Below, one piece after another: positions 1,151-37,972 of a stretch of DNA of 38,076 bases; position 1 is the stretch's first letter; the number at the start of each line of letters is the position of its first letter. A model generated the notes under the pieces. That model searched no databases. It had not been told where the DNA came from and was given only the letters and a program-made list of their open reading frames with translations. Position numbers and translations under genes: made by a program. Origin of the DNA: Octopus bimaculoides (taxonomy: Eukaryota); the NCBI RefSeq assembly GCF_001194135.2, contig NC_068985.1, positions 117,808,509 through 117,846,584 on the forward strand, written 5' to 3'.

Positions 1151-1158
1151 ATTATTTA

Positions 1159-1226
<68 letters not shown>

Positions 1227-5658: not shown

Positions 5659-5700
<42 letters not shown>

Positions 5701-7103: not shown

Positions 7104-7145
<42 letters not shown>

Positions 7146-8476: not shown

Positions 8477-8829
8477 TTTACAAACAATACACAATGCTTC
8501 AAGCGAACTACAATACTCTCCTATTTTTTAACATTATAAAAAGTCGATAAGTGTTACCATGTGTCTCTTAGTTTAATAGTACAGGGCATTCAGCCAGAAT
8601 TTGAGAGGTGCAGGGTTCGATTCTCTGTAGAGGCCTACTGATCACCTTTTTCCCACTTCTTACTTAAGGGTATTTACCCGATTTTCTTAGCTAGTCCATA
8701 GCCATCCTGCGTTAGAGGAATTCCTTTATTTTCTGCTGAAAATGTGTGTGTGTGTGTGTGTGTGTGTCTGTGTGTGTGTGTGTCTGTGTCTGTGTCTCTG
8801 TGTGTGTGGTTCAAATTGACAGAAAACAA

Positions 8830-9010
8830 TAGACGTAGACAGGTGCTGGAACAACGAGCAGGTGTGTTAGTTTAACGCTCGGGAAGAATGGAAAAGTATT
8901 TGACGTTTGGAACCAATGCTCTTCAACAGAAAATATTGAGAGAGAAAAAATGTGTAGGGATTAAGAAAGAGGCTGAGTGGAATGGAGATAATAACGATAA
9001 CCCAGCCGAA
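8830..9010 (-). mobile_element. Penelope-like terminal-repeat remnant with degenerate minimal hammerhead motif (8896-8936)
   Basis: Minus strand reads tttt-CTGTTGA-A-GAGcattggTTC-CAAA-CG-TC-aaa, the layout of a type I minimal hammerhead with two core changes (A6U, G12C). Confidence 0.4.
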
Positions 9011-9027
9011 CCAGGGTGAGCAAGCGC

Positions 9028-9084
<57 letters not shown>

Positions 9085-9085
9085 T

Positions 9086-9395
9086 CCCAACCACATGAAT
9101 CCAAGTTCAGTACCACTACGTAGTACCTTAGGCAAGTGTCTTGTGAGTGGATTTGGTAGACCGAAACTGAAAGAAACATATCCCTATCGTATATATGTAT
9201 ATATCTATGTGTATCATTGTGTCTGTGCTTGTCCCTCCATCACCGCTTGACAACCGGTGCTGGAGTGTTTACATCCCCGTAACTTAGTGGATCACGAAAG
9301 AGATCCTAAAATCGACTTCTTCGACTGCAACCTTTCAAGGCGGTACTCCAGCATGGCTGCAGTCAATTAAAAGAAACAAGTAAGAAAAATAAAAG
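9086..9395 (+). mobile_element. SINE family A, internally deleted copy
   Basis: tcccaaccacatg...ggcaagtgtctt joined to gtgagtggatttggtagac; short (TA) core; gcttgacaaccggtgctgg; tail ggcggtactccagcatggctgcagtcaa. Confidence 0.85.
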
Positions 9396-9530
9396 AAATA
9401 TGTATATAAATATATATATTTAAATATCGAACACTGCATTGGTTGACAAAATTTCTTTCTTTGTGTATTAAGGCTATACTTTGGTTTCATGTTAAGAAAA
9501 TATCTTAATATTTTAACAATTGTAAAGCCT

Positions 9531-9726
9531 ATCACAAGGAGAACTGGTGTTCGTCTCCATTTTGGATAAAAACACGAAAATTCACAGTAAAGTCTCTTAA
9601 AGAAAATAAGAAATTCAAGAGTAGCGCTCCTTGATTTCTTCTTTTTTTACGAGACTTTATTGTGAAAACCCGTGAAAATTCGTGTTTTCATCCAAAATAG
9701 AGACGAACACTGTTCCTCCGTCTGAT
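9531..9726. mobile_element. ~195-bp fold-back (MITE-like) element
   Basis: Left arm atcacaaggagaactggtgttcgtctccatttggataaaaacacgaa is the inverted homologue of the right arm ttcgtgttttcatccaaaatagagacgaacactgttcctccgtctgat. The termini resemble those at 33182 and 34156. Confidence 0.8.
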
Positions 9727-9809
9727 CAGCTTGAAAAATTGCTAAGATATTAAGATATTTCTTAACATGAAACCAATTACGGCCTTAATACACAAATAAA
9801 AGTATATAT

Positions 9810-9840
<31 letters not shown>

Positions 9841-10006
9841 NNNNNNNNNNNNNNNNNNNNNNNNNNNNNNNNNNNNNNNNNNNNNNNNNNNNNNNNNNNN
9901 NNNNNNNNNNNNNNNNNNNNNNNNNNNNNNNNNNNNNNNNNNNNNNNNNNNNNNNNNNNNNNNNNNNNNNNNNNNNNNNNNNNNNNNNNNNNNNNNNNNN
10001 NNNNNN

Positions 10007-10460
10007 TAAGCAGCGATGCGTACAAACATAAACTTGTTATCAGTTCAAATATACTTGAGACATATTGGAACCTGTAAGAAAACTATTCCCTAATTTTGCC
10101 GTAGAGGAAAAACCTCGCTGAAGACTAGAAAGTGTAAACAAGTCAGTCTGGATCGCTCTCCACCTATATCGATGGATGCGTGCATTTCGGATTAGTTATC
10201 TCCTCTTCAACAGTGATCACTTGAAAGAGAGGTGTTCCGAGCTGATTACGGGAGACCACATCTCTCTAATTACCTTCCATTAAAAGTATTGTAACTAGTT
10301 GTGCTAATCGACAGTCCAGCCGTAGCAAATGCGGAATAAAAGCGCTAAGATGTGATGTGTACAAATATAAACTTGTTAGCAGTTCAAATATGCTTGGGAT
10401 ATATTCGCATCAGAAAGAAAGCCTTTCACTACAGAAAAATTCTCGCTGGAAAGTTTGATG
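10007..10460. repeat. ~110-120-bp imperfect direct repeat (10007-10127 and 10347-10457)
   Basis: gtacaaacataaacttgttatcagttcaaatatacttg versus gtacaaatataaacttgttagcagttcaaatatgcttg; both are followed by a gaaaaa..ctcgctg motif. Confidence 0.75.
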
Positions 10461-10769
10461 CTTAGAATAGTCCGGCAGAAAATTGCTTCATAGACTTATG
10501 CTAATTGCACAAATATATATTGGAGCAAGACGAACATCATCGCTTTAGTAATTCACGATCACGACCCATGCGTTTCGCCTTTATTCTGCCTCTCAATGGT
10601 GTGCACTCGAATGTCACCTGTTTAAACGAAATTCGTGTCTCAACATATAAGAAACAATGAATAAAACAATCATTGGTGCTGCGGAATCTTGCTGGACTGT
10701 CCATGAAGAGATTTTATCTAAGACAATTTCACAGCATTGTGTTTGTCAACGGTGTATATCCTCTTTTAT

Positions 10770-11152
10770 TCTTTCATTTAATTCAGTCATTTGACTGTGG
10801 CCATGCTGGAGCACCGCCTTTAGTCGAGCAAATCGACCCCAGGACTTATTCTTTGTAAGCCTAGTACTTATTCTATCGGTCTCATTTGCCGAACCGCTAT
10901 GTTACAGGGACGTAAACACACCAGCATCGGTTGTCAAACGATGTTGGGTGGACAAACACAGACACACAAACACACATATATGTATATATACATATATACG
11001 ACGGGCTTATTTCAGTTTCCGACTACCAAATCCACTCACAAGGCTTTGGTCGGCCCAAAGTAGGAGATACTTCTTCAAAGTACCTCGCAGTGGGACTGAA
11101 CCCTGAACCATGAGGTTGGGAGGCAAGTTTCTTACCACACAGTCATGCCTGC
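10770..11152 (-). mobile_element. SINE family A, near full length
   Basis: The minus strand starts tgcaggcatgactgtgtggtaagaaacttgcctcccaacctcatggttcagggttcagtccc (tRNA-like A and B boxes) and ends ggcggtgctccagcatggccacagtcaaatgactgaat. Confidence 0.9.
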
Positions 11153-12361
11153 ACCTTTGAAATCCTGAGCATGACTTTAAGCATTCAGTGTTTTGGGTCT
11201 GGTTCAGGAGTTCCGTGTGTTTGAAGAGTGTGGAACCACTTATTAGCCATTATTGATCCCTGGTCTGCTCTGACCCAGAGGAGTAGCCCTTGCAAGGCTC
11301 CTAGTTATGGGTTAAGTTGCATATGTTAGGACATTACATCAGTAAGTGGAGACGCAGAAATACCTTTGGTTGGTGTCAGTATGCGCACTAAAACGTCTAA
11401 CTGTTGTCACAGCATCCTTCTATGAGAGAGACACTCTGATGCAAAATCTGCGGTTTCAGGTGATAACTAGTCATGTTTTTGCCTAACACTAGCTACTAAT
11501 CACGGAGATTCAGAAAGCAGCACTTGTGCTATATAAATGATTTTCAGTATAATTCTTTGACGTACAAATGTCTTTTTAAGGGTGACTTCACTTGTCATTT
11601 GTCATTCCATCCGTTAAAAGTCCTATGACGGTGGAAGAGTGGTGACATGTACAGACATAGCTTCTTGGAAGCACACAGTAAGTTACAACTTTCGTCTGTC
11701 ACCTACGCTTCAAACCATGCGGATCTGCAACGGGATAGAATAGACATCTGGGAGGTCAATGATGGAACGTCAGAAATGCCGTTGATGGCAAGGAAACTGT
11801 AATCATTAGCGACGATAGAGGAGCAATTACCATATATATNNNNNNNNNNAATATTTTGTTTACTTTTGGTTGATAATTACACGCAACCTGCCGATAATTC
11901 GACCTTTATTCCTGTATTTGAAACTGATAGTAATTGTCGTTCTGTCCTGGAACTGTAATATACGTATCAAGCAGGTATATGAATCTCTGGTGAAGTTTCA
12001 GTTGTATAATCAACCGAATTACCTGCTCCTTTAAAATTCACTATAGTAAAGTTTCGGGGTTATCTCCCCTGCTTTGTCCTGAGATTTTTTTTGTTTTTGA
12101 TTTTATATATAATGACTAATTTAGATAATTATTCTCCATACTAAAGTTGTAGTTCTCATTGATTAAAAATATCTTTACTTTCTGTATCAAGTATGCAATG
12201 CCAAATTTACCGTTAAGTTTTCATCCATATTTTCTTTTTCTTTTCTCATTTTTTTATCGGCGTGTATGTGCATATGTATATATATATGCGTATGTTTGCG
12301 AATATTTGTACAAGATATGTGTGTGTGTATGTGTGTATGTGTGTATGTGTACACATACATA

Positions 12362-13233
12362 TACGTGGTTTCATCATAGTAACAATGCTAAAGCACACAG
12401 AGTGAAGCTGCTTGGCACAGATTGGACTTGAACACTGCTGTACATGCACACTACGTTCTAATGTTCTAGCTCACTTCCTCTGTTTATAGTAGTGCTTGGA
12501 AGGAAGGTATGTAGCGTGTGATGGTCACATTGACCATGACAGAGAGAGGGGAGCAGAGAATCTGCATCAAATTTTGCGTCAAATCCTTGGCGATACCTGC
12601 TCAGAGGCCTACGCAAAGTTTTCAAAAAGTTTTCATCGTTCTCGACACAATCAACGAGATCTTGCGCAACTGAAGCCCGAATGTCTTTTTGGTCAGTTGA
12701 AAGCAGTTTTGGCACAAACTTGGCAGACACGCGTCTCATACCCAAATCTTTGCTGATAATGGACTGAACTGAACTGTAACTAATCTGCACATCCTCTGAT
12801 AACTCACAGATCGTAATTCGACGATTTTCCCTCACAGCTGCACGCTTCTTTGCGATATCTTTCTCAATTCTGCTGGTTGTAGATCTCCCAGAACGTTCGT
12901 CACTATCAACATTTTTCGGCCATCTTGGAAACGTCTGAATCACTCGTTTACTCATACACTCATACACTCCTCTCGATACAATTTCTACAACTTTGCGTAG
13001 GCCTCCGAGCAGGTATCGCCATGACAACTTTTCTGTCATGGTCAATGCGACGAACATACGCTACACAACTTCCTTCCAAGCACTGCTGTGAACAGCAGAA
13101 TTTAGCTAGAACGTTAAAACTTAGAGCACATTCACAGCAGAGTTCAAGGTCAATCTTTGCCAAGCGGCTTTACTTAGCATGCTTTAGCTTCGTTACCATG
13201 ACATCAGTCTGGATACTTATTGATTAGACCTCG
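12362..13233 (-). mobile_element. Mariner (Tc1/mariner superfamily) fold-back remnant made of two converging 5' ends
   Basis: Minus-strand ORF has DSDERSGRSTTS...RENRRITICELSEDVQIS..SVQSIISKDLGMRRVSAKFVPKLL, typical of the mariner HTH region plus the WVPHEL-like linker. A mariner-type TIR cgaggtctaatcaataagtatccagactg lies at 13233-13205. The plus strand from 12536 reads MTERGEQRICIKFCVK, a mariner N-terminus. No DDD catalytic domain. Confidence 0.85.
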
Positions 13234-13242
13234 TGTTTATAA

Positions 13243-13243
<1 letters not shown>

Positions 13244-13319
<76 letters not shown>

Positions 13320-13326
13320 TGTGTGT

Positions 13327-13362
<36 letters not shown>

Positions 13363-13580
13363 TATACACACTCATGCACTCACTCTTACACATGCAATTC
13401 TGACATGTAAATGTTTGCATAGATACATCTGTGCGTATTCTCATAACCATGTGTGTGTGAGTGTGTGTGCGTATGTGTGTTTGTGTATGCTTGTGTGTGT
13501 GTGTGCGTATGTGTGTTTGTGTATGCTTGTGTGTGAAAGTGTGTTTGGGAATGCGCGCGCTCGTGTATGTGTGCGAGTGA
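13244..13580. repeat. (TG)n microsatellite and derived ~36-bp tandem duplication
   Basis: Direct reading; gtgtgtgcgtatgtgtgtttgtgtatgcttgtgt occurs twice at ~13463-13535. Confidence 0.9.
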
Positions 13581-14599
13581 GTCTATGGTACGAAAGCGAC
13601 TAGAATTTATAATTTTGTTTTACTTATCGAAGTTGAATATCTATTCATTCATTAAAGTTTGGCGCCGATCACGATTACTGTAGAGGGATATTTAAATGAA
13701 AGAAACATCGATTTCTTTTTTTAAAAAAATACAATAACAAGCTCAATAATGATTTTTAGTTTTGTTAAATTTGATCGTATGGTCGTCATCTCGATCATAT
13801 TGTTTTTTTCGTTTTGCTCTTTTCTTTTTCTGGCGACGGTTCGATTAGTCTCTTGTTTATTCTCAAAATAACAAAAGTGCTCAATAATATTTTTTCAGCC
13901 GTGCAGAGCTGACACTATTTTGTGCGGTTGATACAAGGTCTTGTATGTTTAATGCTGATCATTCAATCTAAATCAATACCTATCAGCCTCCACATGTGCA
14001 TTGAGGAAGCCTTAGTGTTTTTTTTTTTTTTACATTCTATCTGAAAGCAGAGCGTCTTTCTTTTAATTTTTTTCCGGTAGCATCATGTCAAAAGGCGTTT
14101 AAGCTGCACTACTTTTAAGATGCAGCACCCGTAGGCATCCATATGTGTACATCAATCAACACGTTCGGATTTCTGAACGGTTTGTATGGCCACCACATGC
14201 AAGTAACGGGCATTAACCCGCAGTCATTTACATCGCCTTTGGTACTTGACTCGTACATTATATTATGCTATATTAGGATGAGAGATAAAGTCGACTTCGA
14301 TGGGATTTGATATCAGGACATAAAAAGCTACATCTGGATATCGGACAGCTACTTTTCCGAGTCTCTTATAATTCTGCTAATCCACCGACTTCGTAAGACT
14401 TATGGTCGAAGAAACGGTTTTTGGAAGTATCTTCGCTGATTTTGATGCCATTTCTTTCAGTTTTACCAGTACTGCTTTTGGATATAACATTTGCTCGGTA
14501 AAACAATACTTTACATAAACAATTGACAATTGTCTTCCTTGTTTTATTCCACAGCAAGAACATATATTTGTTGTAATCTTATAAATATATTTCGGTAAA

Positions 14600-15450
14600 T
14601 CAAATGTTCTCCTTTTTTTGTTCTGCTAGTGTATTAGTAATATTGTCTCTTATAGCATTGATCCTAATATTTGTGCTAAGATGTAACGACAGTACATCTA
14701 TAATATTATTGTTTAACTTCTCTATAAACTTTTCACTTGTTTCCAATAAACAAATTATTTTCTCTAAAATCTTATTATTTTCTTTTTAAACGTATTTATT
14801 CTCTGTGTTAGCTTTCACCAGCTGAATAAGAATTTCTATAGTTTTAATAAGTTCGTGTTTATCTTTAATTATACGTTTTTGAATAGCTTTGCTACTTCTT
14901 TGAAATTTGCGAACTTTTCCTCGATTACATATTATTGATATATATATACTTTCTAACAGTCCTTTTGTATTTTCGATTTCAAAACCTTGTATTCACTATT
15001 ATGTTTGTTTTTTCCTTAAATATTAATTCTAGCTTCTTGTATTATTACACAGGCTTTTGTATAAATCACTTGATTTAGCTCAGAAGTATTTCTGTTATTC
15101 TTTTGAATTGTTACTTCATCAAGACCATCATAGGTTTGTTTTGTGAATCTTTTATAATAATGTCATATTCAACTTTACTGTGTTATGATTCTTCACTGAA
15201 ATTTAACAAGTTTTATTTTTCCTTGTTTTCTCTTATCGTGTATTCAAAATACCAACACTGTTGCATTTATTCGCGTATTCCTATTATTACATCAAATCTT
15301 CCATTCTGTAGAAGGTTTATGACGAGGAAGAGCGATTATTTTCTTTTGGTAGACTTTATGCGCCGTTGAATATCAACTGAGCAGTCTTTTAAAACTCAGG
15401 ATAACTTCCCAAAATGTCTGACCTGACAATGGGTCATAGTCGGTTTGTGA
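14600..15450 (-). pseudogene. Heavily decayed R4/Dong-like LINE, N-terminal ORF fragment
   Basis: Broken minus-strand frames give SELNQVIYTKACVIIQEARI and TIEILIQLVKA..QRINTFK...FRENNLFIGNK-KVYREVK, paralleling KIQAKAQRLSRYIKRIKQFRQ in the + strand copy at ~16400-16470. Many stops and frameshifts. Confidence 0.6.
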
Positions 15451-15645
15451 CAAACCATTCAAGCTTGACTAAGATGCGCTCTGACCAATAAAACAAGGCA
15501 TTGGTGACTTCTGGAGTTATGCATAAAAGCTGGTGTTGCGTGTAGGAAATATCTGGCGCTAAGCTCCGTCCAATGTGAAGATTGCCTCACCTCCAGTTTT
15601 CTTTGGCTGAAGTGGGGAGTTAGTTTTCTTGTTTCGCGGCTATGG

Positions 15646-15790
15646 AAGAAGAAGAAGAAGAAGAAGAAGAAGAAGACCAGTTTCAAATTTTGGCACAAGG
15701 TAAGTAATTTTGGGAGAGGGGTAAGTTGATCCCATCTAGCCCAGCCCAGTGCTTAATTGTTACTTATTTCATCGACTCGACCCCGAAATG
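15646..15790 (-). mobile_element. SINE family B 3' tail ending in (CTT)n
   Basis: Reverse complement of the tail at 22255-22363 (cttatttcatcgac..gaccccgaaa; ttttggcacaagg..aattttgggagagggg). (GAA)n at 15646-15676. Confidence 0.7.
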
Positions 15791-15796
15791 AAGAAA

Positions 15797-17872
15797 GGGC
15801 TCCACCTGCAAGGTCATGCGTTGTTTATCTTGATGTGAGTTCACCATGTTGCGCACATATGATTGTGATGCATGTGCTTGGTGTAACCTTGTGAGACGTG
15901 TAGTCATAATAGGTATACTGGGCTTATCAATTATGGAGACAACAAAATCCAACTTTAAGGTTAAATATGGATCCCAACAAGTTAGGGAATGTCCGAAGCG
16001 ATATCATTAAAAACAGGAGGCTCACAGACACTGAGCTGGAAGAAATAAAAGAAAAAGTCAACAGATCTCAACGTATAACACCAAATACAAATGAAATAGA
16101 AATAGGGACTGCAGAAAACCAAGAAGAGAATTATTTGAGGAGCCCTCTGTAGGTAATGAGATAGAAGTACTTGTAAAACAACCAACAGCACGAAACAGGG
16201 ACTTGGATAGGGAGAAATATTTGGAACTAAAAGAAGAAATACAGAGAAAATGGGAGCAGGTGAAAGCACAAGACACCACAGACAGAGAGTCCCTACCGAA
16301 AGTCAGTATGAATAAGAACCTGAAGGAGTTGATTAAAATTGGCAATAATGTAATAGATGAGATAAAATCAACAACAATACCTGAAGCAAAAGAAAACCTA
16401 AAGTAAAAAATCCAAGCAAAAGCACAACGACTGTCACGATATATAAAGAGAATCAAACAATTTAGGCAGAAGATGGAAAGAAATTTTACAGGGAACTCGG
16501 TAAACAAGAAATAAATGTTGAGCAACCGCAAAAGAAAGAGGATATGGAAAATTTCTGGAGTACGATATGGGAAAATGAAAAACAACATAATGAAGATGCA
16601 GAATGGATTAAGGAACAAGAGACACTCCTGGAAAATAAAGAAGTACAGGAATGGGAAGATATTCAAAAGGAGGAGGTCACCCTGGCCCTGAAAAAGGCCA
16701 GAAATTGGAAGTCACCGGGGAATAGATCGAGTACCAAACTTCTGAATCAAACAGCTAGTTCATATACATGGAGATATGTCATCAGCATACAACGAAGCCA
16801 TGAAATACCCAGAAAATAGCCCAGACTGGTTGACACAGGGAGTGACATACCTAATACCAAAAGCAAATGACACAAGAAACCTAAAGAACTATAGACCAAC
16901 CACCTGTCTACCAACAATGTATAAAATATTAACATCTGTAATCACTGAAAGAACATACACATTCCTAGAAGAAAACAACCTACTACCACCAGAACGAAAA
17001 GGTTGTCGAAGAGGGAGCTACGGATGCAAGGACCAATTGCTAATAAACAAAATGATCCTTTCCTGCAAAACCAGAAAAACAAATCTGAGTACATCATGGA
17101 TCGACTATAAAAAGGCGTTCGATAGTGTACCTCACTTATGGATTATGAAAGTGATGGAAGTATACAAAGTATCCCCAACTCTCATCAAGTTTATGAAACA
17201 CAGCATGAATACATGGGAAACTACGTTAACGCTGAACCATTCCAGTGGATCAATAACAAGCAGACCAATCAAAATCAAAAGTGGTATCNNNNNNNNNNAA
17301 CGCTGAACCATTCCAGTGGATCAATAACAAGCAGACCAATCAAAATCAAAAGTGGTATCTTCCAAGGGGACTCGCTGTCAACCTTAGTATTCTGCTTGGC
17401 ACTGGCACCATTAAGTACCATGCTCAACAAAACCGGGTATGGATGTGAGATCAGGAAGAAAAAAGGGAGTCATCTGTTCTACATGGATGATCTGAAAATG
17501 TACTCAAAAAATGACGAACAACAAGGTCTACCTGCTACCGTTAAAAAGTTCAGTGATGATATCAGGATGCAGTTTGGACTGGAGGAATACGCAAAGGTCA
17601 CTTTCATAAGAGGCAAACTGGCATGTTCTGCGGATATCCACGTAGATACAGAAGCAAGAATCCGAGCACTGGACCAGGAAGAAGCATATAAATACCTTGG
17701 CGTAGACGATAGTAACGACATAAAACATTCAGCAATGAAAGAGAAGAGTACTACAGGAGAGTACGGTTAGTAACAAAGCCTGAACTCAACGCTGCAAGCA
17801 AAATAGAAGGCATTAACACTCTTGCAGTATCAATCGAAGCTTACAGTTTTAACACAATCAACTGGCAAACGA
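15797..17872 (+). mobile_element. R4/Dong-clade non-LTR retrotransposon, 5' half with RT domain; frameshifted and 3'-truncated
   Basis: FWSTIWE..., ARNWKSPG, GVTYLIPK, NYRPTTCLPTMYKILT, KGCRRGSYGCKDQLLINK, WIDYKKAFDSVPH, GIFQGDSLS, HLFYMDDLK, YKYLG; ends at INTLAVSIEAYSFNTINW. No APE domain upstream, consistent with an RLE-type element. Confidence 0.9.
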
Positions 17873-17875
17873 GGA

Positions 17876-17916
17876 CGTAATCTTTGTAAGCCTAGTATTT
17901 ATTCTATTGTTCTCTT
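17876..17916 (-). mobile_element. Short SINE family A fragment at the R4 breakpoint
   Basis: tctttgtaagcctagtatttattctattgttctct matches tctttgtaagcctagtacttattctatcggtctc at ~10850-10883. Confidence 0.7.
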
Positions 17917-17955
17917 TTATTATTATTATTATCATTATTATCATTATTATTATCT

Positions 17956-18160
17956 TAGCAGAATCGTTAGCAGACCGGGCGAAATGCTTTGCGGTGTATC
18001 GTCTGTCGCTACGTTCTAAGTTCAAATTTCGCCGAGGTCGACTTTACATTTCGTCCTTATGGGGTCGGTAAATTAAGTACTAGCTGAGTACTGGGGTCGA
18101 TATAACCGACTAGTCTCCTCCCCAAAATTTCAGGACTTGTCCCTTTAGTAGAAAGGATTA
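17956..18160 (+). mobile_element. tRNA-derived SINE family B, copy 1 of a tandem pair
   Basis: gcagaatcgttagcagaccgggcgaaatgc...agttcaaatttcgccgaggtcgacttt...ggggtcg...aaaatttcaggacttgtccctttagtagaaagg followed by (ATT)n. Confidence 0.88.
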
Positions 18161-18178
18161 TTATTATTATTATTATTA

Positions 18179-18384
18179 AGGCGGTGAGCTCGCAGAATCG
18201 TTATCATGCCGGGAGAAGTGCTTAGTGGCATTTCGTCCGTCCTTATGTTCTGAGTTCAAATTCCGCCGAAGTTCACTTTGCTTTTCATCCTTCCAGAGTC
18301 GATAAAATAAATACCAGTTACGCCGATATAATCAACTTATCCTCCTCCCACAAATTTGCTAGCCCTGTGTCAACAACTAAAATG

Positions 18385-18385
<1 letters not shown>
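18179..18385 (+). mobile_element. tRNA-derived SINE family B, copy 2 of a tandem pair
   Basis: aaggcggtgagctcgcagaatcgttatcatgccgggag...gagttcaaattccgccgaag...gtcgataaaataaataccagtt, followed by an (AGT)n tail. Confidence 0.88.
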
Positions 18386-18416
<31 letters not shown>

Positions 18417-18529
18417 TAGTAGTGTTATTGTTATTCTTCTGTTTTTCACTCACTTTCTCTCAGTATATTCTCTTTCTTATTTCCTTTAAAATGTCTCCAG
18501 ATATATGAGTATGTGTCTGTGTGTATGAA

Positions 18530-18795
18530 TGATGTGGTTAATGGCGGACGTGGTCGTAGTGGTGTCGCGGTGGTGGTGGTGGTGGTGGCGGCGGCGGCGA
18601 TTGCGGTTGTGGTGTTGGCGGTGGAGACAGAGCTAACGTTAAGCAAGTATTGCACAAGGGACTACACAATCAAAATATATACATATACAAATATAAGTTA
18701 TGTATGTGCGTGTATATACATACATATATGTATGTATATATGTGTGTGTGCGTGTGAGTGTGCCTTCATGTGTCTGTGTACACACACACACGCAC

Positions 18796-18883
<88 letters not shown>

Positions 18884-19033
18884 GTACATACATATATATA
18901 TATATATATATATGCACATACTTACATATACATAGGTGCACACAATAAGTGTCTATGAGTGCGTGAGTGTATGTGCGTGCCTGCGTATGTGTGTGTGTGT
19001 GTATGTGAGTGTGTGTGTGTGTGTGTATGTGAG

Positions 19034-19065
<32 letters not shown>

Positions 19066-19417
19066 TGCGTGTGTATAAACAGGTATACATTCTCGTATTC
19101 CGGCTGTCTAGACAGTATTATTGTCACGTCTCACAATCAATATGCAATAATTTTTTGCCCCGTGGTTCAGTAGTAGTAGTAGTAGTAGTAGTGTTAGTAG
19201 TAATGGTGGTGGTTGTATTTGTAGTAGGAGGAGGTGGAGGAGTGGGTGTGCTGGCGGTGCTGCTGCTGCTTGTACTGCTGCCGCTGGTGGCGCTGGTGTT
19301 AGCGTTGATAATGGTTATAATGATGAGGGCGGTGGTAGATTTGATGCCAATAACAATGTTTAGGACGAACACAGTTATGACAATTGCTGCTGTTGTTGTT
19401 GATGTTATTACTACTAC

Positions 19418-19486
<69 letters not shown>

Positions 19487-19515
19487 CATTATTGTTGTTG
19501 TTGCTGTTGTTGTTA
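18530..19515. repeat. Compound microsatellite field: (GTG)/(GCG), (CA)n, (TA)n, (TG)n, (AGT)n, (ATT)n, (GTT)n
   Basis: Direct reading; explains the low-complexity ORFs at 18513-19637. Confidence 0.9.
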
Positions 19516-19957
19516 CTTCAGTGTGCTCTTATTTATTAGTGTTACGTATTTTCGTTGCACAGCTAGGTACATCATTGTGTGTGTTTTTAGACTCAATGTT
19601 TTATTTTCATCTTCCCTATTGTGTCAACTCGACATAATGCTGGGTGCGACAAAAACACCTTCTCATATTCACAATTCATGATAAACATTTCAAATGTTAT
19701 GGCACGCTGTGCGACGGTTCAAATCATAAGCATATCTAAGAAAAACGATAAAATATTGGCTATTTGAAGATAGTGTTAACAACTGCCTAACATTACTAAC
19801 TTTACATCGAATGCCGTGTAAAATGTGGGAGGTTTTTCTACTGCAGGTTATGTATGTGTATTGTGTTAAATGTTCTATTGGGAATATATCTAAGTGTTGG
19901 AGTTTCGATTTTGTATTTGTCTGCACGCTTTTAATACCCTCCATAACACCTATATTA

Positions 19958-20007
<50 letters not shown>

Positions 20008-20008
<1 letters not shown>

Positions 20009-21553
20009 TTGCTTTGTATTTGTTCACGTTGACTCCAAGTCTCACCCAGATACCTCAAGAGACAACAAGTTAGAAGTTCAAGTTCGTGTTAAGACAAGGG
20101 TGCCATTTATTTGGCTTTGCACAAAGTATTGTTTTAGAGAATTCATTTTCTTTTCATTTTATCTAGTTTCAGCTCATGAGCTGTGACCATGCTGGGGCAC
20201 CGCCATTTGGTGTTGCTACATAACTTTACTTCACGAATTTTACTTCAGGAATTGACATTTGGTGCATGAGAGAGTTTGATGCTGCTGCCCTCATCTGCAC
20301 CTCCTGCCGCGAAGTTGGTTCATCTGTTTAAGAAAACACAAGAAAATTATAAGTTTGTTTTAAAATTTGAGATTACATAGACAGTATTTTACGTAAGATA
20401 TGGGCAGTTCCGATGAGCACTATTTTTTTTTTTAATTTCTGCCATTTTTTAAATTTCCTGGTATCTGAGGTATGTAGCAGTCAGCCCTTTGTGCTATCAT
20501 TCCCAGGGCACTTATGACAACAGGTGTTGTTTTAATCTTGAGGCACCACGTTTTGCCAATTTCTATTTCAAGATCTTTATACTTGCTCAGTTTTTGGTAG
20601 GTCTTGACAGATATATCTATGTCGATTGGGACAGTCATATCGATGAGGCAGCATGATTTTTGTCTGAAGACCTTCAATATAATGCCTGGTCTATTCACAT
20701 TTATCTTTCTGTCAGTTTGAACGGTGAAGTTCCAGAGGAGTGAGATGTGGTCATTTTCAAGCACTGGGGATGGCTTGTGTTTCCACCAGTTCTTTTCACG
20801 GGGCAGGTCCAAGTTTTTGCAAATTATCCAGTGAATATACTGTGCTGCTCTATCATGCCTGTTGAGATACTCTGTAGGCGCAAGAAGACTGCACATGGAG
20901 ACATGATCGATGGTTTCATTTTGTTGATTACATACATGACATGTTGGGCTACTGCTGTTCTTTAATATGTTGGCCTGGTAGTTTCTTGTAGATAGACATT
21001 GATCTTGGGCTGCTATAATAAACCCTACTGCCTCTGATTTTAAGCCAGAAGACACTAACCATTGATGGGTAAGGGCTTTGTCAAAATCGGCACTATTAGC
21101 TCTATTTGGGTATTTGTCATTGAGAGGTTTTTCTTGCCATTTATCATTAAGAATATCGAAGGCAGCAGTGTTAGCACAGGTTTTCATACGCTTAGCTTTT
21201 TCTGTGCTTGTTTCTAATTCCACGATTTGTTGTATTTAGAATTCATATAGATATTCCTTTGCATATTTTGTTACTGAGTATGATGTTTTCTTATTTTTGT
21301 GCTTTAGGACAAGTTTTAACATCCAATCATAGTTTTTCAGGTAGGGGTTTAGGCCAATTGTGGCAATCTTCATTATTAATTCCAGTTGTAAAATTCCACG
21401 GCCACCCTCTTTCCTTGGCAGGTAAAGTTGTTCTATATCTGCCTTATTCTATTCTATGCATTGTCAACAATTTTCGTATTTTTTTCTCAAGATTGCATGT
21501 TTCAGTAATTGACCAGTTAATAATGTTGAAACTAAGTCTCGACCGTATGGCTG
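20008..21553 (-). mobile_element. R4/Dong-clade LINE, 5'-truncated 3' half (R4-A), with (AAT)n on both sides
   Basis: SFNIINW...RKLLTMH...LYLPRKEGGRG, then WQEKPL, GFIIAAQDQ.L.TRNY, CCHC knuckle CHVCNQQNETIDHVSMC, RHD, LLWNFTVQTDRKI.VNRPGII (PD mutated to PG), LIDMTVP, KLSKYKDL, and C-terminal IVLIGTAHILRKILSM*, then a 3' UTR and an (AAT)n tail at 19953-20007. Confidence 0.92.
20160..20330 (-). mobile_element. SINE-derived insert within the R4-A 3' UTR
   Basis: Minus strand ggcggtgccccagcatggtcacagc...tgaaactag resembles the family A tail ggcggtgctccagcatggccacagtcaaatgactgaaacaag. The upstream extent is uncertain. Confidence 0.5.
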
Positions 21554-21656
21554 ATTATTATTATTATTATTATTATTATTATCATTATTATTATTATTAT
21601 TGTTGTTGTTGTTGATGGTGTTGTTGTTGTTGCTGTTGTTGTTGTTGTTGTTGTTG

Positions 21657-22214
21657 TATTAAAACTCACAGCTTATGTTGCTGGGTATGATGGAAAGTGT
21701 CAGCAAGCTAAGGTGACACTTTTTTACTGGTCATGCTTCAAGAACCTTGCGAAGAATTCTTGCAGCTCCAAGCAATGCTGATATGTTTAGGTGTTCTACC
21801 TTAACATTTACACTGATCTTTTTCAGCCATGTTGGTAGTTGAGTACTGACACTTCCAAGTGCACCTTTACTATTGGTATCACATCTACTCTCTTCATTGA
21901 CCACAACCTTCGTATTTCCTACCTTAAATCGTCATAGTTGTTTATTATTTCCTCTTTCACATTGATCCTGTTGTCCCCGGGGCATGCTATGTCGATTATC
22001 ATACATGTTCTTTGTTTTTTATTCCCCACAACAATGTCCGGTTTCCGATGTCTGGTCAGGTGATCGTACTGGATCATTGAATCCCACAAGATTTTGCAAT
22101 TCTCATTTTCAGTGACTCCTTCTGGGGTTTGCTGATAACACATCTTTGCTCTCTTTAGGCTGTAATTTCCACAGAGCTCCCATTGGATCATTCTTGCTAC
22201 ATTGTCATGGCATC

Positions 22215-22215
<1 letters not shown>
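21657..22215 (-). mobile_element. R4/Dong-clade LINE, endonuclease-only 3' fragment (R4-B), a distinct subfamily
   Basis: RCHDNVARMIQWELC (RHD region), ENENCKILWD, HRKPDIVV, IIDIACPGDNRI, VDVIPIVKGALG, ALLGAARILRKVLEA*, short 3' UTR. (AAT)n at the 5' junction; (AAC)n then (AAT)n at the 3' junction. Confidence 0.9.
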
Positions 22216-22254
<39 letters not shown>

Positions 22255-22363
22255 TTTCATCCTTTCGGGGTCGATTAAATAAGTACCAGTTACGCACTGG
22301 GGTCGATGTAACTGACTATCCCCTCCCCCAAATTTCAGGCTTTGTGCCTATAGTAGAAAGGAT
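22255..22363 (+). mobile_element. SINE family B, 5'-truncated tail between two (ATT)n tracts
   Basis: ttcatcctttcggggtcgattaaataagtaccagttacgcactggggtcgatgtaac...caaatttcaggctttgtgcctatagtagaaaggattat matches the 3' part of 17956-18160. Confidence 0.88.
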
Positions 22364-22369
22364 TATCAA

Positions 22370-22438
<69 letters not shown>

Positions 22439-22475
22439 CATTATTATTATTATTATTATCATTATCATTGTTATT

Positions 22476-23038
22476 GAGTGAGAGAGCAGTGCATGCCATC
22501 AAAGTGACACTGGGGTAAAATATACGAAGACCAGTATACCCATCATGACTACCCGTCAGATAAGGGTACACCAGGCACATGCATCACAACCATATGTGCG
22601 CAACATGGTGATCTCATATCAACATAAACAGCGCATGACCTCGCATGTGGGGCCCAGTTAGAATTTTCTTAAGGTTGAGTAGCCCATCCCGCTCAAAAGG
22701 TCCCTGAATAAAGTTTGTTGAAGGATGTTGATCAAAAAACACATGTTTCCGAAATTGAATTATTCAAACCCCAAAGAATTCCTCTCAACACATGGCTATG
22801 ATGTTCCACCACTACTTCTGCTCATGATCAGAGATGCACATATCGTCAGCCACCAAGGGACATGCTCAACTGGTTATGGTCAAACAACTGACAAGCAAAT
22901 CTATGGTATTGAGCAGAATATTTGTTATAGCCCATCTTTTTATACCAAGACAAAACAATAAACAATATACATGATAACACTTCCAATCAATTAAGATCAG
23001 AAGCCATGAGAGCCACTGGCTGGCACTGCATCCGAGCA

Positions 23039-23040
<2 letters not shown>
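22476..23040 (-). mobile_element. ~560-bp non-autonomous element, copy 2, bounded by (ATT)n on both sides
   Basis: Colinear with 560-1106; tracts at 22364-22475 and 23043-23103. Confidence 0.88.
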
Positions 23041-23102
<62 letters not shown>

Positions 23103-23103
23103 C

Positions 23104-24720
23104 AATCTTTTAACTCAGGTTTTCTTGAAACTCTTGGATTCTTGCATGCGTAGTGGGCTTGCTACCTGCGTCCTATGATACCATAGTATCTGTTTCTGTT
23201 TTGTTCTTAAAATATCTAATATTTTCCTGATGATTCTGACCGTGCAAAAGACCAAACCCTTTGTAACATCTCTACTGGGCATTCTATTCCGATTTCTTAT
23301 ATATTCTTCTTGATGCCTTCTGATATTGTCCCCAACAATAGTTGACACTATCTTTACCTTCTTCATTTTCCACAGCAGTGCTATTTCATATTTGCGACCC
23401 TTTCATGGAGCCCTCTCAGCTTCTTCACCCAATAACCATGAACACCGTCCGGTCTTGGATTCTTTCAATTTGAAATTGTACTTATCTATCTTTTTATGTT
23501 TCTGTATTTATTTTTATGTTGTCTTGGCCTTGTATATTTCTCAACCTATTTTGGATTTCATTCAGCCACTCCCCTTTATCATTATGCTTTATATGTTGAT
23601 CTTAGATTCTTCCTCCAGAATTCCTTGCTTTCATATGTATCAGGTACCAGTGTTAGGTGTAATTGCCCATCTAGTTCCACAAACAGTTTTTCTCCGATTG
23701 CCTTCGAAGTATCCGTCTGAGTGAAATTTTTTTTTCCTATTGTCAAGTTTTGCCTTGATTGCTACTGCTCTTTGTTTTAATTATTCCGACATTACATCAT
23801 ACCCTTTATCTTTTATTCTCTATGTTCTTTCCGCTTTTATTCTTACGCTTTCGTTTGCAGTTCCCCTCTTTTAAATCAATCAACTTGTCCCAAATGTCTT
23901 TCTAACTTTGTTTCTCACAAAATCGTCTCCGTCTGTATGGTTCTTTACTTAGTGTTTGTTCTCTTCCTGTGTAACCAACTCTTTCAGCGGCAACCCTAGC
24001 TGCAACCCTTATTATCGTGTTAGTTTCAGTTATATATACCCTCTGAAATAGTCCAAGAGCAGAATCTATTTTTTAGGTTTCTGCTTTTAGCTTGCGCCTA
24101 TCAGCATATCTCAGGTTAGAGGCGGGTGTATTTGAACCTGGCTTTCTCTAATATATCGGAATATCATTCTCACTGCTTTGTTAATCAGCATCATATCCTT
24201 GTAATATAGCTCTTCCCACTACTTCGTCTTCATTTGCCAGCAATGCATTTACACCTTGCCCTAAATCTTGTTACTATTCATTCCTGTCCCCGATAGGCAC
24301 ATTATCTGCTGAGGCAGTATTATCATCATTTTCTATTTTCCTTTTTATCTCTTCAATTTCCATGTCTGTTAACCACCAATTTGTTCTTATTGCTTTGTGC
24401 CTACCCGTTGCTTACTTATCTCAAAGAGTCCCGTTTCATCCCATTTTGATTTCAGGCGTTGTCGGAAACCCCTTCTACTGGGTTCACTTCTGATTCAGCA
24501 TTCAATCAGAGAACGGTTTGCTTCCTTGTCCCACCCTTTTCTCTGCCTCCGACTTTGGGTTTAAGCAGTTTCTGAATGGCAACATGGCCTGCGCTGCTCA
24601 ACCACAGTGCATCCGCCGAGCAAAAGACCTTCCGCCTTGGTTCCACTCTCATCCACGGGACACTTGTATTGGACGTTTTCACTCTACATTGAGGTTTGTG
24701 TCTTAAAGTTAGCCACCAAC
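23104..24720 (-). mobile_element. R4/Dong-clade LINE with a large internal deletion (R4-C)
   Basis: N-terminal frames GGCTVVEQ, SEPSRRGFRQRLKSKWDETGLFEISKQR, WLTDMEIEEIKRKIEN, PDGVHGYWVKKLRGLHERVA, fused at ~23393 to C-terminal KYEIALLWKMKKVKIVSTIVG...TVRIIRKILDI, then a 3' UTR and (AAT)n. The 5' boundary is approximate. Confidence 0.8.
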
Positions 24721-24789
24721 CAATATTTTTATCGAAACACCATCACCAGTAAGATTGTCAACCATGACTGAGGACTTCTTCCTACTCCT

Positions 24790-24925
24790 ACCAAATCCAC
24801 TCAAAAGGTTATGGTCGGCCGAACTCTATAGTAAAAGATACATCCCCAAGGTGCCACACAGTGGGAGTGAACCCGGAATCATATGGCTGGAAAGCAATCT
24901 TCTTGCCACACAGACCATGCCGGCA
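24790..24925 (-). mobile_element. SINE family A head fragment
   Basis: ccaaatccactc...tggtcggcc...ccccaaggtgccacacagtgggagtgaacccggaatc...cttgccacacag matches the reverse complement of the family A head. Confidence 0.8.
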
Positions 24926-24969
24926 TCAATAATATATACACATAGATGCATATATATGCATATAGACAT

Positions 24970-25001
<32 letters not shown>

Positions 25002-25509
25002 GTATATATGTGTGTGTATATATGGACAACGCTGTATGGCGTTCGATTATAAATAAATAAGATAGAAAATACACATGAAGTACAGAACAAAATACCAAAA
25101 TATACACAGTAAGGACAGAACACCAGCAACGAGTGAAAAATATGTAAACACATAACAAGAGACAAGAACGGGACAAAATACCAAAAAAACCTCTAACACC
25201 TCCTGAGTTGTCCACTGTTTTTATTACTCCCTACTCCGCGCTTTCAACGACGAGATAGGAAAACTTCATAAGGTAGCAGCATCCAGAAACTTTAAAAAAT
25301 ATAAAATTTGTGGAAAGTTAGGGTTTCGAACGAACAAACAGCAACAGAGTGGACGTACAGAGTAAACAATCGACGAAGAGAAATATTAAGCGCTGTTAGG
25401 CCAAGACGCAATGTAATGGATACGCCTAGGAGAAATTTTGAAAGGATATAGAATAAATAGAAGAGGAGAAAATAGTAGAAGATATCTATAAATATATACG
25501 AATATATAC

Positions 25510-25672
25510 TCTTTACTTGTTTCAGTCATTTGATCCCATGACTTATTCTTTGTAAGCCTAGTACTTATTCTATCGGTCTCTCTTGCCGAACCACTAAGTT
25601 ACGGGGACGTAAACACACCAACATCGGTTGTCAAGCGACGTTGGGAGGACAAACACAAACACACAAACATAC

Positions 25673-25709
<37 letters not shown>

Positions 25710-26192
25710 NNNNNNNNNNNNNNNNNNNNNNNNNNNNNNNNNNNNNNNNNNNNNNNNNNNNNNNNNNNNNNNNNNNNNNNNNNNNNNNNNNNNNNNNNNN
25801 NNNNNNNNNNNNNNNNNNNNNNNNNNNNNNNNNNNNNNNNNNNNNNNNNNNNNNNNNNNNNNNNNNNNNNNNNNNNNNNNNNNNNNNNNNNNNNNNNNNN
25901 NNNNNNNNNNNNNNNNNNNNNNNNNNNNNNNNNNNNNNNNNNNNNNNNNNNNNNNNNNNNNNNNNNNNNNNNNNNNNNNNNNNNNNNNNNNNNNNNNNNN
26001 NNNNNNNNNNNNNNNNNNNNNNNATATATATATATATACATATATACGACAGGCTTCTTTCAGTTTCTGTCTACTAAAGCCACTCACAAGGCTTTGGTCG
26101 GCCCGAGGCTATAGTAGAAGACACTTGCCCAAGGTGCCGCGCAGTGGAACCATGTGGTTGGTAAGCAAGCTACTTACCACACAGCCACTCCT
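25510..26192 (-). mobile_element. SINE family A; internal microsatellite largely in an N gap
   Basis: 3' half at 25510-25650 and 5' half at 26046-26192 flank a (CA)/(TA) tract plus gap. Confidence 0.88.

Positions 26193-37945: not shown

Positions 37946-37972
<27 letters not shown>

What the first reader, a model, noticed from the sequence alone, without database searches (positions are those of the whole stretch)
19953..24720. Same-strand stack of R4/Dong-type retroelements strung on (AAT)n tracts
Seen: four minus-strand elements follow one another (R4-A 20008-21553, R4-B 21657-22215, the 560-bp element 22476-23040, R4-C 23104-24720). Every internal junction is an (AAT)n or (AAC)n tract, and the three LINE pieces have different 3' UTRs and divergent proteins, so this is not a tandem duplication. 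Known: RLE-encoding R4-clade elements can be sequence specific, and Bombyx Dong inserts into (TAA)n. Inference: several lineages target the same microsatellite strand, so each new tail re-creates a target and an oriented array builds up, like telomeric retrotransposon arrays but at an internal microsatellite. This could help explain the high (AAT)n load of the genome.
Basis: partly seen in the sequence, partly recalled or inferred. Interest (0 to 1): 0.78.

Follow-up and report, generated by a model that had tools for sequence, protein, structure and literature searches.

The report
Dong-type retroelements stacked on (AAT)n
Five dead retrotransposon copies, three of them Dong-type LINEs of a family that inserts only into (TAA)n microsatellites, lie head to tail on one strand of an octopus genome; this is real, but it is the expected by-product of a known insertion preference.

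Summary
Window 19953-24720 carries five, not four, minus-strand retroelement pieces, each followed by an (AAT)n-type tract. A 107-bp SINE head at 22255-22361 was missed.

R4-A, R4-B and R4-C all match profiles built from Dong-like proteins. Their architecture is RT, then a CCHC zinc knuckle, then a C-terminal restriction-like endonuclease. The closest solved structures are R2 proteins. R4-C is an internally deleted copy that keeps its own C-terminus, 3' UTR and tail. The 560-bp element is a non-coding, SINE-like repeat of roughly 10^4 copies.

The targeting idea is supported. In other animals, 5 of 5 single homologous copies are flanked on both sides by sense-strand (TAA)n. One locus (L006), by its contig name probably from a long-read assembly, holds three unrelated Dong-like lineages in the same orientation, separated by (AAT)n. 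The stack abuts single-copy DNA.

(TAA)n targeting by Dong elements, including in molluscs, is published, and Dong is already annotated in octopus. This is therefore a new example of a known kind.

Three things were not done: a long-read check of this locus, an octopus-wide 5'-junction table, and an RT tree with reference Dong/R4 sequences.

The parts
19515..19952 (.). Single-copy flank on the 3' side of the stack. It is not a sixth element.
   Evidence: Read depth is 0-6 at about 0.7-1.4x sampling, against hundreds to thousands for the elements. There is no self-similarity in the window.
19953..20006 (-). (AAT)18 tract: the tail of R4-A and/or the remnant of the original target microsatellite.
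   Evidence: TRF; sequence.
20008..21553 (-). R4-A, a 5'-truncated dead Dong-like LINE. It keeps the end of RT (21469->21095), the CCHC knuckle and restriction-like endonuclease (21340->20444), the C-terminal end in a shifted frame (20429->20376) and a ~365-nt 3' UTR.
   Evidence: Profile HMM E 1e-121 and 2e-19. It is 78% identical to O. bimaculoides A0A0L8FXY1. Reads from other copies continue upstream of 21533, so this copy is 5'-truncated. The first catalytic motif reads RPG where homologs have RPD. The frame carries stops and a frameshift.
21554..21657 (-). Compound tail (AAC)19(AAT)16 between R4-B and R4-A.
   Evidence: TRF; sequence.
21658..22214 (-). R4-B, a 5'-truncated dead copy of a second, divergent Dong-like lineage. 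It keeps the endonuclease and C-terminus plus a ~77-nt 3' UTR.
   Evidence: Profile HMM positions 167-288 (E 2e-31) and 285-327 (E 2e-5). tblastn gives 33-37% identity to homologs.
22215..22254 (-). (AAT)13 tract.
   Evidence: TRF.
22255..22361 (-). It ends at ...GAAAGGATGAAA and runs straight into (AAT)13.
   Evidence: 81% identical to 18049-18156. Full copies at 18385->18179 and 18156->17954 continue to ...GCCGCCTT(AAT)n. The family depth is about 7,000-18,000.
22362..22475 (-). Imperfect (AAT)38 tract.
   Evidence: TRF.
22476..23040 (-). The 560-bp element: a non-coding, SINE-like, very high-copy retroelement with an (AAT)n tail. A second copy lies at 1106->560, also with AAT tracts on both sides.
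   Evidence: 86% identical second copy, flanked by tracts at 490-559 and 1149-1224. Depth is 5,000-17,000, lower toward 23040, which fits minus orientation with 5' truncation. It has no Dong HMM hit. ATT-like sequence is the commonest class among the listed continuations upstream of its 5' end.
23041..23103 (-). (AAT)21 tract: the tail of R4-C.
   Evidence: TRF.
23104..24720 (-). R4-C, an internally deleted Dong-like element of a third lineage. It comprises the 5' region and N-terminal ORF (24720->23747; motif LTDMEIEEIK at 24372), the pre-RT region (23746->23387), then directly the last ~60 codons (23390->23211) and a ~105-nt 3' UTR.
   Evidence: RT-family HMM positions 16-136, E 6e-8. For the C-terminal HMM, 1 of 2000 shuffles reaches the real score, and pairwise alignments agree. 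Motifs are collinear with the + strand copy and with L001. Depth is 50-200 over 23104-23424 but about 1-10 upstream. The 5' boundary is uncertain, between 24720 and 24787.
24788..24930 (-). 3'-truncated fragment of a third, tRNA-like SINE family. It abuts the 5' side of R4-C with no AAT tract between them.
   Evidence: Copies at 37360-37485, 11023-11153, 37824-37951 and 26071-26184 continue differently beyond consensus position 143.

Best explanation
The locus is a graveyard of independent retrotranspositions into one (AAT)n microsatellite.

The LINEs involved are Dong-type. They encode a single ORF with an N-terminal DNA-binding region, a reverse transcriptase, a CCHC knuckle and a C-terminal restriction-like (PD-(D/E)XK) endonuclease.

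Inferred mechanism:
1. The protein recognises and nicks (TAA)n in one polarity.
2. The element RNA, which ends in (UAA)n, is reverse-transcribed from the nick.
3. A full-length or 5'-truncated copy is joined to the upstream part of the tract.

Each insertion splits the tract and adds a new tail. Target sequence therefore remains on both sides, and every later insertion has the same orientation. Three divergent Dong lineages (R4-A, R4-B, R4-C) and two non-autonomous elements (the 560-bp repeat and a SINE head) accumulated this way next to single-copy DNA. All copies here are dead.

Shown: the anatomy, the family relationship, the (TAA)n flanks in other species, and stacks in other species. Inferred: the nicking specificity, the order of events, and that the short elements use the Dong machinery.
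For: **Anatomy.**

**Family.**
- Profile HMMs built from 240 homologs hit all three LINE pieces.
- An intact 1116-aa relative has RVT_1 and zf-RVT, no APE domain, and a weak PD-(D/E)XK-type hit at its C-terminus.
- Its best solved relatives are R2 proteins (E 4e-29, against 1e-16 for L1 ORF2).
- One alignment to R2 runs collinearly from RT to the endonuclease.

**Targeting.**
- Five of five homolog loci have sense (TAA)n at both ends. They come from a coral, a starfish, a marine metagenome scaffold and two ENA assemblies. Three are 5'-truncated copies.
- In the window, the 5' truncation points of R4-A and R4-B, both copies of the 560-bp element and the SINE head all abut AAT tracts, which make up only 1.84% of the sequence.

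**Stacks elsewhere.** L006 holds three lineages with no blastn similarity on the same strand, bounded by (AAT)n, in a 2.3-Mb contig. See also L007.

**Boundary.** The stack abuts single-copy DNA.

**Literature.** Dong targets (TAA)n in insects, molluscs and cnidarians (PMC7998251; PMC3812793). A Dong consensus with a full ORF exists for O. bimaculoides (PMC9115989). Dong-R4 is abundant in O. vulgaris (PMC13282606).
Against: - R4-C has no AAT at its 5' side. It abuts a truncated SINE instead.
- The SINE head family is not strictly tract-specific. Two of four copies in the window have non-AAT 5' flanks, and genome-wide its 5' flanks are heterogeneous. It may use another LINE, since octopus RTE also has microsatellite tails (PMC9115989).
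- A Dong-like RT copy on the opposite strand lies 2 kb away (16401-17874), so orientation is local to a tract, not regional.
- At the R4-A 3' end almost no reads from other copies continue into this copy's tract. I attribute this to tract phase and read filtering but did not prove it.
- No HDV-like ribozyme was detected.
- No octopus-wide junction statistics and no long-read support for this locus were obtained.
Confidence: 0.72

Rival explanations
1. Assembly artefact. Each element-to-tract junction is real, but the short-read assembler joined unrelated contigs through (AAT)n tracts. Under this reading the order and adjacency of some pieces is wrong, and the 'stack' is partly fictitious.
For: The window is a gap-ridden short-read scaffold with 16 N runs. 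One gap (17289-17298) has the same 20 codons on both sides. Two tracts are 104 and 114 nt, at or beyond short-read length. No PacBio run is served, and read-laying refuses long ATT stretches.
Against: The pure ATT runs are at most 66 nt and carry interruptions. The same architecture is seen in large contigs and chromosome-level assemblies of other species (L004, L005, L006, L007). It is also seen twice more in this window (560-1224 and 17917-18385). The flanking unique DNA sits in the same contig.
Confidence: 0.12
2. Tail annealing without endonuclease specificity. Elements that merely carry (AAU)n tails are inserted by any LINE machinery wherever a nick exposes complementary ATT. Pre-existing tails are then favoured by microhomology rather than by sequence-specific cleavage.
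For: The SINE head family has (AAT)n tails but mostly heterogeneous 5' flanks. Octopus RTE, an APE-type LINE, also ends in a microsatellite (PMC9115989).
Against: For the Dong-like LINEs themselves, 5 of 5 foreign loci and 2 of 3 copies in the window have the tract on the 5' side too, including at random truncation points. This is the signature of target specificity. The family encodes an R2-type endonuclease, and most lineages of that type are target-specific (PMC4640811).
Confidence: 0.1
3. One-shot chimera. A single target-primed reverse transcription event jumped from template to template (R4-A RNA, then R4-B, SINE, the 560-bp element and R4-C), producing the whole array at once.
For: By my own recollection, not checked in a paper read here, R2-type reverse transcriptases can jump between templates. 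All units share one orientation. R4-C is internally deleted and abuts a truncated SINE without a tract, which looks like template switching.
Against: The jumps would have to leave R4-A and R4-B at internal positions. Each unit carries a long tract of its own, 39-114 nt. Stacks elsewhere contain full-length units (L006). Nothing here measures whether the units are the same age.
Confidence: 0.06

Closest known systems
Dong (Bombyx mori) and Dong-like elements (DongAg, DongBg of the snail Biomphalaria glabrata), R4 clade
   Same: Single-ORF LINE with RT and a C-terminal restriction-like endonuclease. It inserts into (TAA)n in one orientation, with (TAA)n on both flanks (PMC3812793, PMC7998251, PMC3774820). 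Flanks seen here.
   Different: No direct sequence comparison with Bombyx Dong was possible. No 5' HDV-like ribozyme was detected here. The octopus copies are dead fragments. Three lineages and two short non-autonomous elements share one tract.
R2 elements and their internally deleted derivatives (SIDEs)
   Same: R2 proteins are the closest solved structures, collinear from RT through the CCHC knuckle to the endonuclease. R4-C is an internally deleted copy that keeps its 5' and 3' ends, like a SIDE.
   Different: The target is a microsatellite, not 28S rDNA. Pfam reports no family on the N-terminal ~450 aa, so no N-terminal zinc finger or Myb domain was found. R4-C is low-copy, so it is not an amplified SIDE family.
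Telomeric retrotransposon arrays (TRAS/SART in Bombyx, HeT-A/TART in Drosophila)
   Same: Head-to-tail, single-orientation arrays that build up because each insertion lands in a simple repeat or leaves a new end for the next one.
   Different: This array is internal and abuts single-copy DNA. It uses an RLE-type rather than an APE-type LINE. No host function is implied.
RTE-type LINEs that seed microsatellites
   Same: Retroelement 3' ends that carry and spread microsatellites (PMC2887409). Octopus RTE has a microsatellite 3' UTR (PMC9115989).
   Different: RTE elements insert without tract specificity, whereas here the tract is also on the 5' side. RTE may nevertheless be the driver of the SINE head family.

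Membership tests
R4/Dong clade (Dong-type, (TAA)n-specific RLE LINE) | Non-LTR reverse transcriptase domain. | tested here: met
   RVT_1 in intact and near-intact relatives. The RT-family HMM hits R4-A (RT end), R4-C (pre-RT region) and the + strand copy at 16401-17874. R4-B retains no RT part.
R4/Dong clade (Dong-type, (TAA)n-specific RLE LINE) | CCHC knuckle plus a C-terminal PD-(D/E)XK restriction-like endonuclease, and no APE domain. | tested here: met
   The alignment to R2 structures is collinear through CxxC...H...C and the PD...D...K region. zf-RVT scores above its cutoff, PF15518 (which I recall is a PD-(D/E)XK endonuclease family) gives a weak hit, and there is no Exo_endo_phos in the 1116-aa ORF. 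R4-A has RPG in place of RPD, so it is an inactive copy.
R4/Dong clade (Dong-type, (TAA)n-specific RLE LINE) | Insertion into (TAA)n in sense orientation, with the repeat on both flanks. | tested here: met
   Five of five single loci in other species, plus L006 and L007. In the window this holds for R4-A and R4-B on both sides, but for R4-C only on the 3' side.
R4/Dong clade (Dong-type, (TAA)n-specific RLE LINE) | RT phylogeny groups it with Dong, R4 and Rex6 rather than with R2, NeSL, CRE or HERO. | not testable with these tools
   No reference Dong, R4 or Rex6 protein sequence could be obtained, and the paper supplements hold no alignments. Indirect support only: octopus repeat libraries label an abundant LINE class as Dong-R4 (PMC8967140, PMC13282606, PMC9115989). 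HERO also has microsatellite-specific members (PMC4640811), so this remains open.
R4/Dong clade (Dong-type, (TAA)n-specific RLE LINE) | Divergent N-terminal Myb/SANT-like domain without zinc fingers (PMC7998251). | tested here: inconclusive
   A conserved LTDxE(I/L)EEIK motif is shared by R4-C and the + strand copy. There is no Pfam hit in the N-terminal 450 aa, and the database search with the R4-C translation found nothing.
R4/Dong clade (Dong-type, (TAA)n-specific RLE LINE) | HDV-like self-cleaving ribozyme at the 5' end (shown for Dong and R4, PMC3774820). | tested here: inconclusive
   The Rfam scan of 17300-25700 at E<=10 gave no ribozyme hit. Only R4-C may retain a 5' end, it is degenerate, and Rfam models may not cover this lineage.
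Non-autonomous partner of the Dong LINEs (SIDE/SINE), considered for the 560-bp element | Same target and tail as the LINE, with the tract on both flanks. | tested here: met
   Both copies in the window have AAT tracts on both sides. ATT-like sequence is the commonest class among the listed continuations upstream of the 5' end. The listed clusters are 538 ATT-like, 290 pure ATT, 292 palindrome and 214 internal duplication. Reads with long pure ATT may be under-counted.
Non-autonomous partner of the Dong LINEs (SIDE/SINE), considered for the 560-bp element | A 3' (or 5') end shared with the autonomous LINE. | tested here: not met
   There is no DNA similarity to R4-A, R4-B or R4-C in the window. 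Only the (AAT)n tail is shared. A parent LINE elsewhere in the genome was not searched.

The most novel reading that the evidence does not exclude
The octopus's very abundant short retroelements with (AAT)n tails, above all the ~10^4-copy 560-bp element, may be mobilised by the Dong-type endonuclease LINEs and share their (TAA)n targeting. In that case tract-borne stacks would be the birthplace of the modular, composite octopus SINEs: the same head is fused to different bodies at 15680-15925, 17954-18385 and 22255-22361. This LINE/SINE system, rather than replication slippage, would generate much of the genome's (AAT)n load.
Probability: 0.25. Interest if true: 0.55.

Novelty: new member of a known kind. 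Interest (0 to 1): 0.3.

Why it matters
The locus is a clean worked example of how a microsatellite-specific LINE family shapes a genome. Each insertion renews its own target, so one tract grows into an oriented multi-family array. The same elements seed many of the (AAT)n tracts that fragment short-read cephalopod assemblies and complicate microsatellite markers.

For annotation, (AAT)n-bounded fragments in octopus should be read as nested Dong-type insertions, not as tandem duplications.

The mechanism itself is already established for Dong elements, so the gain is descriptive. That would change only if the high-copy short elements prove to depend on the Dong machinery.

Tried and rejected
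**Steps that failed or found nothing**
No junction could therefore be bridged.
- No PacBio run is served.
- Exact-protein look-ups of the R4-A ORF and of the octopus UniRef hit P0042 found no contigs, so no further octopus copies could be fetched.
- The Rfam scan gave only low-complexity miRNA-like noise and no HDV-like ribozyme.
- ARAGORN found no tRNA-like SINE heads.
- The database search with the frameshift-joined R4-C translation found nothing.
- The RT search returned no hit above 66% identity and none labelled as octopus.
- Paper supplements held no RT alignments for a tree.

**Readings I held and dropped**
- I first thought R4-C was a 3'-truncated 5' fragment with no 3' UTR. I rejected this after the HMM and shuffle tests showed the extreme C-terminus next to the tail and the read depth rose over 23104-23424.
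- I considered 19515-19952 a possible sixth element with an (AAC)n(AAT)n tail. I rejected this because it is single-copy.
- I considered the 107-bp SINE piece and the 560-bp element to be + strand elements with (ATT)n tails. I rejected this after seeing the full SINE copies at 17954-18385 and the depth gradient.

**A limit of the tool**
Read-laying under-reports ATT flanks. The fractions derived from it are lower bounds.

Full report
**Source and setting.** The window is a short-read scaffold with 16 runs of N. The best named protein hit for the largest ORF is Octopus bimaculoides A0A0L8FXY1, at 78% identity. Public runs of one organism hold the sequence. The finding lies in one contig, 17299-25709.

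**Observation.** Tandem Repeats Finder and the sequence confirm the tracts. On the + strand they are:
- (ATT)18 at 19953-20006
- (ATT)16(GTT)19 at 21554-21657
- (ATT)13 at 22215-22254
- imperfect (ATT)38 at 22362-22475
- (ATT)21 at 23038-23102

Read on the minus strand, the order is:
1. R4-C (24720->23104), then (AAT)21
2. the 560-bp element (23040->22476), then (AAT)38
3. a 107-bp SINE head (22361->22255), then (AAT)13
4. R4-B (22214->21658), then (AAC)19(AAT)16
5. R4-A (21553->20008), then (AAT)18
6. single-copy DNA

Self-BLAST shows no DNA similarity among the LINE pieces, which rules out a tandem duplication. AAT-type tracts cover 1.84% of non-N bases, and 11 of 12 have the same polarity. 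Four of the five 5' junctions in the stack abut a tract, which random insertion would give with probability below 1e-5 (my binomial inference).

**What the LINE pieces are.** R4-A encodes the end of RT, a CxxC...H...C knuckle and a PD...D...K region. Its homologs are widespread in marine invertebrates.

I built two profile HMMs. One came from the 120 C-terminal homologs and one from 120 RT homologs of a second, + strand copy in the window. Scanned over the whole window, they hit only four places:
- R4-A (E 1e-121 and 2e-19)
- R4-B (E 2e-31 and 2e-5)
- R4-C 23746->23387 (pre-RT region, E 2e-7; 6e-8 in the 10-kb scan)
- the + strand copy at 16401-17874

In R4-C the pre-RT match ends at 23387. 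The last ~60 residues of the family ORF begin at 23390 (pairwise alignments). Only 1 of 2000 shuffles of that peptide reaches its HMM score. Read depth is 50-200 over 23104-23424 but about 1-10 upstream. R4-C is therefore an internally deleted copy that retains its own C-terminus, a ~105-nt 3' UTR and a tail. My interim idea that it was 3'-truncated was wrong.

All three copies are dead. They carry stops and frameshifts, and R4-A has RPG where homologs have RPD.

**Architecture of the family.** A near-full relative (L001) and an intact 1116-aa ORF (L006) show RVT_1 and zf-RVT, with no APE domain. A weak hit to PF15518, which I recall is a PD-(D/E)XK endonuclease family, lies at the C-terminus. 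The best solved relatives are R2 proteins (E 4e-29, against 1e-16 for L1 ORF2). One alignment runs collinearly from RT through the knuckle into the endonuclease. This is an R2-group, RLE-type LINE.

**Target specificity.** I fetched the DNA around homologs from other species.

| Locus | Copy | Upstream tract | Downstream tract |
|---|---|---|---|
| L001 | 3.76-kb element | (TAA)18 | (TAA)23 |
| L002 | 5'-truncated | 51-nt AAT tract | ACT/AAT/AGT tract |
| L003 (marine metagenome scaffold) | ~3.9-kb element | (TAA)43 | (AAT)26 |
| L004 (coral Oculina patagonica) | 5'-truncated | (AAT)32 | (AAT)5... |
| L005 (starfish Asterias amurensis) | 5'-truncated | (AAT)36 | (TAA)73 |

In all five, the repeat is on the sense strand at both ends.

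Two further loci show stacks. L006 lies in a 2.3-Mb contig. It has three Dong-like LINEs on one strand, each bounded by (AAT)n, and two of them are directly head to tail. No blastn similarity exists between any pair, so they are different lineages. L007 has six same-strand AAT tracts spaced 2-4 kb apart around a Dong-like RT.

**Literature.**
- Dong elements target (TAA)n in B. mori, A. gambiae and the snail B. glabrata (PMC3812793).
- Dong RNA is processed by a 5' HDV-like ribozyme from a transcript that begins in TAA repeats (PMC3774820).
- Most RLE clades are target-specific (PMC4640811).
- A Dong consensus with a full ORF is in the O. bimaculoides repeat library (PMC9115989).
- Dong-R4 is abundant in cephalopods, with 1129 recent insertions in O. 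vulgaris (PMC8967140, PMC13282606).
- I found no paper that describes multi-lineage stacks on internal microsatellites. They follow directly from the known specificity.

**The short elements.** The 560-bp element is non-coding. It has a second copy at 1106->560 with AAT tracts on both sides.

It is very abundant. Read depth is 5,000-17,000 in a sample of 1,934 Mb of reads. The single-copy flank shows depth 0-2. Taking a genome size of about 2.7 Gb from my own knowledge, the sample is about 0.7x, so the element has on the order of 10^4 copies.

Depth falls toward 23040, which fits minus orientation with 5' truncation. Among the listed continuations upstream of its 5' end, ATT-like sequence is the commonest class. 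The listed clusters are 538 and 290 reads of ATT-like sequence, 292 reads of a palindrome and 214 reads of an internal duplication.

The SINE head belongs to a ~200-bp SINE that ends ...GCCGCCTT(AAT)n. Two full copies lie head to tail at 18385->17954, joined by (AAT)7. Its 5' flanks are mostly heterogeneous, so it is not strictly tract-specific. It may use another LINE, because octopus RTE also ends in a microsatellite (PMC9115989). That these short elements use the Dong machinery is inference only.

**Boundaries of the stack.** On the 3' side, 19526-19941 is single-copy. On the 5' side R4-C has no AAT tract. It abuts a 3'-truncated tRNA-like SINE fragment on the same strand (24788-24930). This is the one junction that does not fit strict targeting. 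It could reflect a 5'-junction deletion or a template switch.

**What could not be done.**
- Read-laying refuses stretches with long ATT runs and seems to under-report reads that contain them. No tract could be bridged, and genome-wide flank fractions are lower bounds.
- No long-read run is served.
- No further octopus copies could be fetched.
- No Dong, R4 or Rex6 reference sequences were available for a tree.
- Rfam found no ribozyme.

**Verdict.** It is an instance of known biology in a genome where the family is already annotated. I rate it a new member of a known kind with modest interest. The most novel reading still open is that the high-copy (AAT)n-tailed short elements depend on the Dong machinery, and that stacks are where composite octopus SINEs arise.

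Noticed in passing
window 16401-17874 (+), N gap 17289-17298: A fourth Dong-like copy (pre-RT region and RT, E 2e-109) lies on the opposite strand 2 kb from the stack. It is cut at about 17874, and the tail of a minus-strand SINE begins at 17917. The same 20 codons (TLNHSSGSITSRPIKIKSGI) appear on both sides of the 10-N gap, so that gap is a false gap with overlapping ends.
   Followed up: partly
window 17917-18385 (-): A second small stack: two full copies of the ~200-bp SINE lie head to tail, joined by (AAT)7 and followed by an (AAT)n tail. The upstream copy is preceded by an (ACT)n tract, not AAT.
   Followed up: yes
window 15680-15925 (+); 22255-22361 (-); 17954-18385 (-): The SINEs are modular. 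The same ~107-nt head, ending ...GAAAGGATGAAA, occurs in three settings. It is fused to the 3' part of the 560-bp element at 15680-15925. It is fused to a different body in the full SINE copies. In the stack it is followed directly by (AAT)13. Stacks may be where such composites arise.
   Followed up: partly
genome-wide reads laid on window 22908, 23039 and 20101-20106; absent from the window: A 28-nt perfect palindrome, GGTTCGTCCATCGATCGATGGACGAACC, is the commonest non-ATT sequence upstream of 560-bp-element 5' ends and of the R4-A 3' module in other copies. It has no match in the window. Its identity is unknown.
   Followed up: partly
window 1063-1149 and 22894-23040: The 5' end of the 560-bp element is prone to tandem duplication. 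There is a 43-bp unit repeated twice in the copy at 560-1149. Genome-wide there are many reads in which position 23040 is joined back to 22894 or 22992.
   Followed up: no
window 20141-20340: About 195 nt of the R4-A 3' UTR is skipped in many contigs of other copies (joints 20140->20325-20343). Part of it (20157-20211) resembles 37214-37267 and 5854-5903. It is a subfamily-specific or nested segment.
   Followed up: no
window 19405-19514 and 1225-1250: The compound (AAC)n(AAT)n arrangement seen after R4-B recurs in single-copy DNA at 19514->19405 and upstream of the second 560-bp copy (...GACTATG(ACA)4...(TAA)n). Reads also show GTT/ATT compound tracts elsewhere.
   Followed up: no
L004 5231-5964 (coral): A ~600-nt piece with no Dong HMM hit lies between two (AAT)n tracts, directly upstream of the 5'-truncated Dong-like copy. 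It is a possible two-element stack with a non-autonomous partner in a coral.
   Followed up: no
window 18660-19090 and 24930-25040: The Rfam 'mir-297/mir-466/mir-3149' matches (E down to 3e-8, all below gathering scores) fall on TG/TA/CA microsatellites and are low-complexity artefacts.
   Followed up: yes
window 24788-24930 and copies at 4263-4372, 11023-11153, 26071-26184, 37360-37485, 37824-37951: A third, tRNA-like SINE family is scattered through the window, mostly on the minus strand. Its copies continue with ACGGAAACTGAAAGAAGCC..., unlike the fragment next to R4-C.
   Followed up: partly
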